Source: Glycera tridactyla (Eukaryota). From it: a DNA stretch of 64,000 bases. This document shows, one piece after another, positions 38,163-39,176 of this stretch. Numbering within the stretch: the first letter of the stretch is position 1; the number at the start of each line of letters is the position of its first letter. Both the position numbers and the translations under genes were made by a program. The notes beneath the pieces were generated by a model. That model was not told the DNA's origin. It made no database searches and saw nothing but the letters and a program-made list of their open reading frames with translations. Where the stretch lies: NCBI GenBank assembly GCA_965644265.1, contig OZ286471.1:43958001-44022000 (forward strand), read 5' to 3'.

Positions 38163-38310
38163 ATGGATCGGTTGATAGGACGTATCGGGGACCTGAAGGA
38201 CCCGAGGTCGGAGAGTGGAGATAGTGCCGTCGACCGACTCAATAGTCGTCACACAGTCACTCTACTCTTCCTCTTCTCTATTATAGTCACTCTCAAACAG
38301 CACTATGTAG
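38163..38310 (+). CDS. inx: Innexin A, first coding exon (148 nt)
   Basis: ATG GAT CGG...CAC TAT GTA G|gttagt. Encodes MDRLIGRIGDLKDPRSESGDSAVDRLNSRHTVTLLFLFSIIVTLKQHYV (D..DRLN motif and TM1), homologous to 50436-50589. A strong acceptor (ttttctcacttcttcttccag) ends at 38068, suggesting an upstream 5'UTR exon. Confidence 0.92.
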
Positions 38311-39176
38311 GTTAGTATATGTTGTATAGGCCATCCTGCTTGTGAGATAGTCATTCAGAATCAGCACTATGTAGGACATTATATGTTTTACAGGCCATCC
38401 TGCTTGTAGGATAGTCACTCTCAAACAGCACTATGTAGGACATTATATGATTCACAGGCCATCTTGCTTTTAGGGAAATCACTCTCTTATAACTTTGTGT
38501 AGGTCAGTATAGACCATCCTGCTTGTAAGATAGTCACTCTCAAACAGCACTATGTAGGTTAGTATATGTTGTACAGACTACCCTGCTTGTAAGATAGTCA
38601 CTCTCAAACAGCACTATGTAGGTTAGTATATTATGTACAGACTATCCTGCTTGTAAGATAGTCACTCTCGAGCAGCACTATGTAGGTTAGTATATGTTGT
38701 ACAGACTGTCCTGCTTGTAAGACAGTCACTCTCAAACAGCACTATGTAGGTTAGTGTATGTTCTACAGAGTGTCCTGCTTGTAAGATAGTCACTCTCAAA
38801 CAGCACTATGTAGGTTAGTATATGTTCTACAGACCGTCCTGCTTGTGAGATAGTCACTCTCAAACAGCACTATGTGGGTCGGTATATGTTTTACAGGTCA
38901 TCCTGCTTTTAGGGTAATCACTCTCTTACAACTCTGTGTAGGCCAGTATAGACCATCCTGCTTGTAGGACAGTCTCTCTCAAACAGAAATATGTAGGTCA
39001 TGTATGTGTTGTACATAGTGTATGTTCTACAGACTGTCCTGCTTGTAAGATAATCACTCTCAGACAGCACTATGTAGGTCAGTATATGTTCTACATGCTA
39101 TCTTGTAGGTAAGAGAGTCACTGTCAAACATCATTATCTGGGTTAGTGTATTTTCTACAGACCATCCTGCTTGTAA
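38283..39176 (+). repeat. 14-unit tandem repeat of about 64 bp, overlapping the end of innexin A exon 1 and filling most of intron 1
   Basis: Unit atagtcactctcaaacagcactatgtag|gttagtatatgttgtacagactaccctgcttgtaag. Units start at about 38283, 38347, 38411, 38475, 38530, 38594, 38658, 38722, 38786, 38850, 38914, 38969, 39050 and 39114. Confidence 0.95.

What the first reader, a model, noticed from the sequence alone, without database searches (positions are those of the whole stretch)
38283..39176. Innexin A intron 1 is mostly tandem copies of its own exon end and splice donor
The first 64-bp unit begins 28 nt inside coding exon 1 (ATA GTC ACT CTC AAA CAG CAC TAT GTA G = IVTLKQHYV) and runs through the donor gttagt. 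Thirteen more copies fill about 865 of the 983 intron bases. Five downstream copies keep the exact tatgtag|gttagt context (GT at 38558, 38622, 38686, 38750, 38814). Using any of them as a plain extended donor reads GGT TAG, an immediate stop, so they could act as decoy or poison donors. Each AG|GT also fits the tandem-duplication model of splice-site creation. Innexin B intron 1 has no such array.
Basis: partly seen in the sequence, partly recalled or inferred. Interest (0 to 1): 0.8.

Follow-up and report, generated by a model that had tools for sequence, protein, structure and literature searches.

The report
Splice-donor minisatellite in innexin intron
The end of the first coding exon of an annelid gap-junction (innexin) gene, with its splice signal, has been copied 13 more times into the next intron; this is real, but it is a repeat type already known ("mirage" minisatellites) whose spare splice signals are normally ignored.

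Summary
Intron 1 (38311-39293) of innexin A is 88% filled by a 64-nt tandem array. Its first unit is the last 28 nt of coding exon 1 plus the first 36 nt of the intron. Five intronic units carry the exact authentic donor context, and reading past the real donor gives GGT TAG.

This is a "mirage"-type minisatellite, in which an exon-intron boundary is reiterated. The type is described in amphioxus Adh3 and globin genes and in human F7, IFI6, CBS, LMNB2 and PDGF. In those genes the most upstream donor is used almost exclusively.

The copies look like decaying repeats:
- GT survives in 5 of 8 diverged units, against 4.9 expected neutrally.
- The donor hexamer is no better kept than the rest of the unit.
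- 20 of 23 variant codons are non-synonymous and one is a stop.
- The two copies nearest the real donor have lost GT.

The intron predates the array, because paralogues share its site and phase. The array therefore duplicated a donor rather than creating an intron.

The genome is minisatellite-rich: about 11% of a random 200 kb. This scan's notes list at least seven other such arrays in the same genome. No RNA test was possible. This is a new member of a known kind, of low interest.

The parts
38163..38310 (+). Innexin A coding exon 1 (148 nt, ends in phase 1 after ...IVTLKQHYV)
   Evidence: Sequence. Pfam PF00876 matches residues 20-47 to profile positions 1-28. Orthologous mRNA L007 carries the same IVTLKQHYVGEPI.
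38283..38346 (+). Unit U1: last 28 nt of exon 1, the authentic donor TAG|GTTAGT (GT at 38311) and the first 36 intron nt. This is the founder unit of the array.
   Evidence: The 12 nt upstream of 38283 match the unit's tail at only 4 of 12 positions (counted by eye on the sequences).
38311..39293 (+). Intron 1 of innexin A (983 nt)
   Evidence: The donor GT and the acceptor ...tttcctag| are placed by the Pfam profile junction.
38347..38474 (+). Units U2-U3: the exon-derived part is kept (U3 has 0 of 28 changes), but the donor is destroyed (TAG|GACATT in both, a shared change)
38475..38529 (+). Unit U4, a 55-nt variant with donor-like TAG|GTCAGT (GT at 38503). It is 91% identical to U11 (38914-38968), so a multi-unit block was duplicated 439 nt downstream.
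   Evidence: (D1: 38285-38559 against 38724-38998, 87%)
38530..38849 (+). Homogeneous core U5-U9 (89-95% identical to each other), each with the exact authentic context CACTATGTAG|GTTAGT
38850..39177 (+). Degenerate distal units U10-U14. Donors are TGG|GTCGGT, TAG|GCCAGT, TAG|GTCATG (MAFFT places U12's 17-nt insertion here, so the table prints GTCAGT), TAG|GTCAGT and TGG|GTTAGT. A mutation-made TAG|GTAAGA lies at 39109.
39178..39293 (+). Unique AT-rich intron tail carrying the only strong polypyrimidine tract (83% pyrimidines) and the acceptor TAG|
39294..40429 (+). Innexin A exon 2 (rest of the protein, through the stop codon)
   Evidence: PF00876, E 4.6e-73, profile positions 31-333
50436..51430 (+). 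Comparator: innexin B exon 1 (50436-50589) and its intron 1 (50590-51430). Same site and phase, donor TGA|GTAAGT, no array.
   Evidence: A and B are 65% identical as proteins.

Best explanation
This is a locus-specific, 'mirage'-type minisatellite. A 64-nt segment spanning the exon 1/intron 1 boundary of innexin A was duplicated in tandem. The segment comprises 28 exon nt, the donor, and 30 further intron nt. Slippage or unequal exchange then expanded it to 14 units, which lengthened an intron of about 150 nt to 983 nt.

The array includes a block duplication of at least U3-U4 into U10-U11 and a young, homogenised core (U5-U9). It is a by-product of a genome that makes minisatellites at a very high rate.

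Inferred, not shown: splicing uses the first, authentic donor, because it is the first encountered downstream of the exon. The downstream pseudo-donors are silent or used at trace level. Any such transcript ends at GGT TAG after codon 50 and would be a nonsense-mediated-decay substrate. The array has no dedicated function and is neutral or slightly deleterious.
For: 1. The array and its register are real.

2. The exon end is ancestral coding sequence. Orthologous mRNA L007 matches it at 24 of 28 nt, and all 4 differences are synonymous. Paralogue B matches at 15 of 28. So the intronic units derive from the exon and are younger than the split of this species from the source of L007.

3. The unit was not found elsewhere in the 2.04-Gb genome.

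4. The copies decay neutrally. GT is kept in 5 of 8 diverged units, against 4.9 expected from the 21.8% per-site divergence. The donor hexamer's pairwise difference is 0.23, against 0.19 and 0.26 for the two flanks. Of 23 distinct variant codons in the copies, 20 are non-synonymous, and U4 has a stop.

5. There is no Rfam hit and no stable fold (z = +1.3).

6. Internal acceptor candidates are weak, at 0.72 pyrimidine content or less against 0.83 for the real one.

7. The genome is minisatellite-rich. A random 200 kb holds 15 arrays of period 20-200, covering 10.8% of its bases, and this window holds 8.

8. The same architecture is published, with mostly silent pseudo-sites. Examples are human F7 IVS7, LMNB2 and PDGF, with IFI6 and CBS using only the two nearest pseudo-sites (PMC1557585), and amphioxus 'mirages' (PMC3087553).

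9. As a lead only: this scan's notes list at least 7 other exon-end-plus-donor arrays in this genome. For two of them, RNA is reported to show use of the first donor only.
Against: No RNA evidence for this locus could be obtained, so silence of the pseudo-donors is inferred from precedent in other animals.

Five pseudo-donors are identical to the real one over at least 34 nt, so some use cannot be excluded.

In the core units the exon-derived 34 nt vary less than the other 30 nt (3 of 170 cells against 11 of 150, p about 0.03, cells not independent). This could reflect constraint. It could equally reflect gene conversion from the selected exon copy.

U3 keeps all 28 exon-derived nt while 3 of its 6 donor bases changed. 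That could hint at selection against the nearest pseudo-donors, but U2 and U3 share the change, so it is a single event.
Confidence: 0.75

Rival explanations
1. Regulated unproductive splicing. The pseudo-donors (or the pseudo-exons acting as decoy exons) are used under some conditions. They would yield transcripts with a premature stop, or retained introns, that tune innexin A output.
For: Five exact copies of the donor with 28 nt of identical exonic context. Any extended form stops at GGT TAG. The exon-derived part is slightly better kept in core units. In IFI6 and CBS the nearest pseudo-sites are used constitutively (PMC1557585).
Against: Donors decay at the neutral rate. The two nearest pseudo-sites are dead, so the first live one is 192 nt downstream. 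The exact copies are simply the youngest units. Paralogue B manages without an array. Most published cases are silent.
Confidence: 0.1
2. In-frame 45-nt cassette exons (the reading of scan note s1-318310). Weak ...TACAG| acceptors inside the units, paired with the next unit's donor, define 45-nt phase-preserving exons. Each would insert 15 residues (for example DYPACKIVTLKQHYV) after TM1.
For: Four candidates with exact donors are open and in frame: 38577-38621, 38641-38685, 38705-38749 and 38769-38813.
Against: Pyrimidine content upstream of these acceptors is below 0.6, against 0.83 for the real one. Adjacent cassettes would be separated by only 19 nt. Variant codons in the copies are 20 of 23 non-synonymous, with a stop in U4. 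The insert would duplicate the TM1 end at the conserved YVGxPIxCW junction. Being in frame follows trivially from the 64-nt period minus the 19-nt spacer.
Confidence: 0.04
3. Assembly artefact. The array, or its length, is an error of assembly.
For: Tandem repeats are error-prone in assemblies. The amphioxus globin mirage was mis-assembled in a draft (PMC3087553).
Against: Units differ from each other (48-95% identity). The array has a structured pattern of variants, two 55-nt units and an 81-nt unit. There are no N runs in it. At 0.9 kb it is well within the length of a single long read. The sequence belongs to a 94-Mb contig of a 207-contig assembly.
Confidence: 0.03
4. Intron born by tandem duplication (Rogers model). 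The array is the remnant of the duplication that created intron 1.
For: The exon ends in AG|GT (codons GTA GGx). Mirage repeats have been proposed as a route to intron gain (PMC3087553).
Against: An intron at the same site and phase exists in paralogues B and L012. It is inferred in the 63%-identical relative P0001, whose open reading frame starts inside an intron just before GEPISCW. Units are up to 94% identical to U1, whereas A and B share 15 of 28 nt there. The intron's 3' end is unique sequence, not a unit copy.
Confidence: 0.02

Closest known systems
'Mirage' minisatellites of amphioxus (Adh3; globin genes BflGb6 and BflGb9), as described in PMC3087553
   Same: Tandem repeats whose units span an exon-intron boundary. 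Many units keep AG/GT signals. Units are 81-100% identical, with a homogenised centre and diverged edges. Regular splicing is reported as undisturbed.
   Different: This one is in an annelid and in an innexin gene. Its unit is 64 nt (amphioxus units are 10-160 nt). Length polymorphism and splicing were not tested here.
Human F7 IVS7 37-bp VNTR (PMC1557585)
   Same: The first monomer spans the exon-intron boundary, so the authentic donor is followed by identical pseudo-donors. In F7 only the most upstream one is used.
   Different: The F7 unit contains only 4 exon nt, whereas this one contains 28. F7 has 5-9 near-identical copies, whereas this array has 14 units, of which 5 are exact and 3 (U2, U3, U11) have lost GT. 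The selection rule was shown in mammalian cells, not in annelids.
Human IFI6 (6-16), CBS IVS13, LMNB2 and PDGF boundary-spanning minisatellites (as summarised in PMC1557585)
   Same: The splice donor is reiterated in the intron by a minisatellite. LMNB2 (100-bp unit) and PDGF (81-bp unit) use only the authentic donor.
   Different: In IFI6 and CBS the two nearest pseudo-sites are also used. Here the two nearest copies have lost GT.
Intron gain by tandem duplication of an AGGT-containing segment (PMC3265369, PMC4974935; abstracts only, seen)
   Same: A tandem duplication that includes AG|GT provides extra splice signals.
   Different: No new intron is made here. The intron predates the array, and the duplicated signal is an existing donor.

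Membership tests
Mirage / boundary-spanning splice-donor minisatellite | Head-to-tail tandem array with a minisatellite-size unit (about 10-160 nt) | tested here: met
   64-nt period, 14 units
Mirage / boundary-spanning splice-donor minisatellite | The first unit spans a genuine exon-intron boundary, so the splice site is reiterated inside the intron | tested here: met
   U1 is 28 exon nt plus 36 intron nt. The exon is placed by the Pfam profile junction and the orthologous mRNA. There are 6 exact copies of the donor 16-mer.
Mirage / boundary-spanning splice-donor minisatellite | Concerted evolution: homogenised interior, diverged edges | tested here: met
   U5-U9 are 89-95% identical. U2-U4 and U10-U14 are 48-88% identical.
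Mirage / boundary-spanning splice-donor minisatellite | The authentic (outermost) site is the one used; the copies are silent or nearly so | not testable with these tools
Only the first donor keeps the reading frame open.
Mirage / boundary-spanning splice-donor minisatellite | Length polymorphism or instability among alleles | not testable with these tools
   Only one copy of the locus in the assembly. No reads were available.
Poison-exon / regulated unproductive splicing element | The alternative junctions are seen in RNA | not testable with these tools
No match to the exon end in metagenome or metatranscriptome contigs.
Poison-exon / regulated unproductive splicing element | The alternative form carries a premature stop | tested here: met
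   GGT TAG directly after the authentic exon end
Poison-exon / regulated unproductive splicing element | Alternative splice signals are kept by selection | tested here: not met
   GT is kept in 5 of 8 diverged units against 4.9 expected. The donor hexamer is no better kept than its flanks.
Intron gain by tandem duplication (Rogers model) | The intron is absent from relatives that lack the duplication | tested here: not met
   Paralogues B and L012 have an intron at the same site and phase without an array
Intron gain by tandem duplication (Rogers model) | The intron's 3' end is a copy of the upstream exon end | tested here: not met
   39178-39293 is unique AT-rich sequence
Innexin (PF00876) gene | Full-length match to the Innexin profile with an open frame | tested here: met
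   Exon 1 matches profile positions 1-28 and exon 2 matches 31-333, E 4.6e-73. Best relatives are annelid innexins.

The most novel reading that the evidence does not exclude
The array is a working regulatory module. Its exact pseudo-donors, each with 28 nt of exon-like context, would engage U1 and exon-definition factors as decoy exons or poison donors. That would divert a regulated share of innexin A pre-mRNA to retention or decay. If the many such arrays in this genome behave the same way, minisatellite turnover would be a rapid way to evolve gene-dosage control.
Probability: 0.07. Interest if true: 0.55.

Novelty: new member of a known kind. Interest (0 to 1): 0.2.

Why it matters
It matters little as a single locus. 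It adds an annelid gap-junction gene to the list of genes whose splice donor is reiterated by a minisatellite. It also shows, by simple neutrality tests, that the spare donors behave as decaying copies.

The wider point is that this genome seems to hold many such arrays. It could therefore serve as a natural experiment on how the spliceosome picks the first of many identical 5' splice sites outside mammals, once RNA data are laid on these loci.

Tried and rejected
- **RNA evidence.** No junction counts exist for this locus.
- **Orthologous intron.** The closest relative, P0001 (63% identical), lies on a contig whose DNA could not be fetched. P0002 is an mRNA-like contig without introns. The Paralvinella gene lacks an intron at this site.
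- **Metagenome scan.** An exact-match scan of metagenome contigs for the exon end plus AGG found nothing.
- **Dispersed repeat or transposon origin.** Rejected, because the unit occurs only at this locus in the genome.
- **Structured RNA or small-RNA host.** Rejected. There is no Rfam match and the fold is no better than shuffles. A 7-bp inverted repeat at each unit junction shows no consistent covariation.
- **Recursive splicing at AG|GT sites.** Considered and dropped. The intron is under 1 kb and the AG|GT sites have weak pyrimidine tracts.
- **Unusual U1 snRNA explaining GTTAGT donors.** Rejected, because the U1 5' end is the canonical ATACTTACCTG.
- **Joined exon 1-exon 2 model.** The exons were searched apart.

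Full report
**Observation**

The stretch 38283-39176 is a genuine tandem array. Tandem Repeats Finder gives a 64-nt period over 38283-39015 (11.7 copies, 78% matches), continued at 39017-39170. Tiling with the consensus and a MAFFT alignment resolve 14 units, U1 38283-38346 to U14 39114-39177. U4 and U11 are 55-nt variants, and U12 is an 81-nt unit with an internal partial duplication.

The host gene is an innexin. Coding exon 1 (38163-38310, 148 nt, phase 1) matches Pfam Innexin profile positions 1-28. The long second exon (39294-40429) starts at profile position 31, with E 4.6e-73.

U1 consists of the last 28 exon nt (ATA GTC ... GTA G), the authentic donor TAG|GTTAGT and 30 more intron nt. 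The other 13 units fill about 867 of the 983 intron bases.

The 16-mer CACTATGTAGGTTAGT occurs six times exactly, at the real donor and with GT at 38558, 38622, 38686, 38750 and 38814. Shuffled sequence gives 0.05. Reading past the real donor gives GGT TAG. Innexin B intron 1 (50590-51430) has no comparable array.

**Direction and age**

The exon end is old coding sequence, not repeat-derived sequence. A metatranscriptome contig (L007, protein P0002, 56% identical over the query) encodes the same IVTLKQHYVGEPI. It matches the 28 exon nt at 24 positions, and all four differences are synonymous. Paralogue B matches at 15 of 28.

Intronic units U3, U5, U6 and U9 match the exon at 28 of 28. The array is therefore far younger than the A/B duplication (65% protein identity) and younger than the split from the species that gave L007.

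The intron itself is older than the array. Paralogue B and a more distant paralogue on another chromosome (L012...TATGTAG|GTGAGT) have an intron at exactly this site and phase. Other paralogues (L011, L014, L016-L018, L020) read straight through. The 63%-identical relative P0001 was called as an open frame that begins in non-innexin residues and becomes innexin exactly at GEPISCW, which implies an intron there too. A Paralvinella innexin has its first intron elsewhere.

So the array copied an existing donor. It did not create the intron.

**History of the array**

The identity matrix shows four groups:
- a young core, U5-U9 (89-95%), to which U1 is closest (86-94%);
- a subfamily of U2, U3 and U10 (84-88%);
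- the pair U4 and U11 (91%), both with the same 9-nt deletion;
- the degenerate distal units U12-U14.

The 275-nt stretch 38285-38559 matches 38724-38998 at 87%. So a multi-unit block, at least U3-U4, was duplicated 439 nt downstream, and the core then expanded between the two copies. A homogenised interior with diverged edges is ordinary minisatellite turnover. The same pattern is described for amphioxus mirage repeats (PMC3087553). Without the 13 extra units the intron would be about 150 nt.

The unit is not a dispersed element. A search of the whole 2.04-Gb assembly finds it only at this locus.

**Are the spare donors kept by selection?**

Donor 9-mers are:
- U1 and U5-U9: TAG|GTTAGT
- U2 and U3: TAG|GACATT (GT lost, a shared change)
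- U4 and U13: TAG|GTCAGT
- U10: TGG|GTCGGT
- U11: TAG|GCCAGT
- U12: TAG|GTCATG (read; MAFFT places U12's 17-nt insertion here, so the table prints GTCAGT)
- U14: TGG|GTTAGT

The eight diverged units differ from U1 at 21.8% of sites outside the GT. From that, 4.9 of 8 should keep both bases, and 5 do. Among intronic units the donor hexamer's mean pairwise difference (0.23) lies between that of the exon-derived 28 nt (0.19) and the remaining 30 nt (0.26). The five exact donors are simply in the youngest units.

The exon-derived part of the copies is not under coding constraint. Of 23 distinct variant codons, 20 are non-synonymous and U4 carries a stop. In the true orthologue, 4 of 4 differences are synonymous (Fisher p = 0.002).

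The one hint of constraint is that in core units the first 34 nt vary less than the last 30. The counts are 3 of 170 cells against 11 of 150 (p about 0.03), or 3 of 34 variable columns against 9 of 30 (p = 0.05). The cells are not independent. Gene conversion from the selected exon copy would give the same pattern.

**Other splice signals in the array**

Every AG inside the array has a weaker pyrimidine tract than the real acceptor, at 0.72 or less against 0.83.

The 45-nt in-frame cassettes noted elsewhere in the scan (s1-318310) do exist on paper. Four of them have exact donors. Their acceptors fall below 0.6 pyrimidines, and neighbouring cassettes would be only 19 nt apart. Being in frame follows automatically from the unit geometry. 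They are unlikely to be used.

The alternative ...GTAAG| acceptor would give a 28-nt frameshifting pseudo-exon.

The species' U1 snRNA has the canonical 5' end ATACTTACCTG. GTTAGT is therefore a 7-of-9 match, no better in the copies than in the original.

There is no Rfam family and no stable RNA or DNA fold (z = +1.3 and +1.4).

**Background rate**

This genome makes minisatellites in quantity. Twenty random 10-kb samples from seven chromosomes hold 15 arrays of period 20-200 with at least 3 copies. These cover 10.8% of the bases. The window itself holds eight.

Extrapolated, that is about 150,000 arrays. I assumed about 200,000 donor sites and founder units of about 60 nt; these are my assumptions, not measurements. 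Under random placement, hundreds of arrays would then straddle a donor. A boundary-spanning array is therefore expected, not surprising.

Consistent with this, the scan's own notes list at least seven other exon-end-plus-donor arrays in this same genome. These notes are unchecked leads. Two follow-ups report RNA showing use of the first donor only.

**Comparison with what is known**

The architecture is published and named.

PMC1557585 describes the human F7 IVS7 37-bp VNTR, whose first monomer spans the exon 7-IVS7 boundary. It shows by mutagenesis that the pseudo-sites are functional but never compete with the most upstream site. The same paper lists IFI6 (6-16), CBS IVS13, LMNB2 and PDGF as further cases. 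In IFI6 and CBS only the two nearest pseudo-sites are also used.

PMC3087553 describes the 'mirages' of amphioxus Adh3 and globin genes. These are tandem repeats spanning exon-intron boundaries that do not disturb regular splicing. The paper also discusses them as a possible route to intron gain.

The innexin array meets every structural criterion of this class. The functional criteria, silent copies and length polymorphism, could not be tested.

**Mechanism, with what is shown and what is inferred**

Shown:
- the tandem duplication of a boundary segment;
- the later block duplication and core expansion;
- neutral decay of the copies;
- loss of GT in the two nearest copies;
- a stop directly after the real exon end.

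Inferred from precedent in other animals, and from the fact that only the first donor keeps the frame open:
- the first donor is chosen;
- the downstream copies are silent or give trace amounts of decay-prone RNA.

I put 0.75 on this reading, about 0.10 on regulated unproductive splicing, and small odds on cassette exons, assembly error or intron birth.

**Limits**

- The DNA of the closest relative's contig was not available.
- One metagenome pattern scan was blank.
- The joined exon 1-exon 2 model was deliberately not built or searched. The exons were handled apart.

**Verdict**

This is a new member of a known kind, and the interest is low (0.2).

Noticed in passing
G000:C32:44036283-44036426 (minus strand; locus L011), about 14 kb beyond the window's right end: A third innexin paralogue sits in the same cluster. 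It is 55% identical to exon 1 of A and reads straight through the site where A and B have intron 1 (HYVGEPIACW is continuous).
   Followed up: partly
window 51559-52009: Innexin B has an extra phase-0 intron (donor GAG|GTTAGT) between ...KSHE and PHRFIGYYQW. Innexin A lacks it, so this is an intron presence/absence difference between 65%-identical neighbours.
   Followed up: partly
window 38311 and 51559; L013 (G000:C28:76522762-76522896): Three of the five innexin donors read here are GTTAGT, with T at +3. From general knowledge of animal donors this is unusually frequent. The U1 snRNA 5' end is nevertheless canonical.
   Followed up: partly
G000:C4:77045576-77171102: At least 42 identical U1 snRNA genes (149 bits each) lie in a tandem array. 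Most are spaced about 2.13 kb apart, and all are on the minus strand.
   Followed up: no
L008:3001-3216 and L008:4714-4893 (Paralvinella palmiformis innexin gene): Two first-coding-exon-like segments, 50% identical at protein level, lie upstream of one shared main exon. They are candidates for alternative or mutually exclusive first exons.
   Followed up: no
window 17350-20292; 23973-25002; 45135-45830: Large minisatellites: 81 nt x 37, 61 nt x 17 and 60 nt x 11.6. The 81-nt and 60-nt arrays keep long open frames (up to 1003 and 215 residues). Whether any of them is coding or touches an exon boundary was not examined.
   Followed up: no
window 38575-38600 and every unit junction: Each junction between units carries a 7-8-bp inverted repeat (GACTATC ... 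GATAGTC) around a 10-nt loop. One junction, U7/U8, has a compensatory pair of changes and the others do not. The overall fold is not better than shuffles.
   Followed up: partly
window 39108-39114: A mutation in the tail of U13 created TAG|GTAAGA, 185 nt before the real acceptor. It ties with the authentic donor at 7 of 9 U1-complementary positions and is the only one of those sites with A at +3.
   Followed up: no
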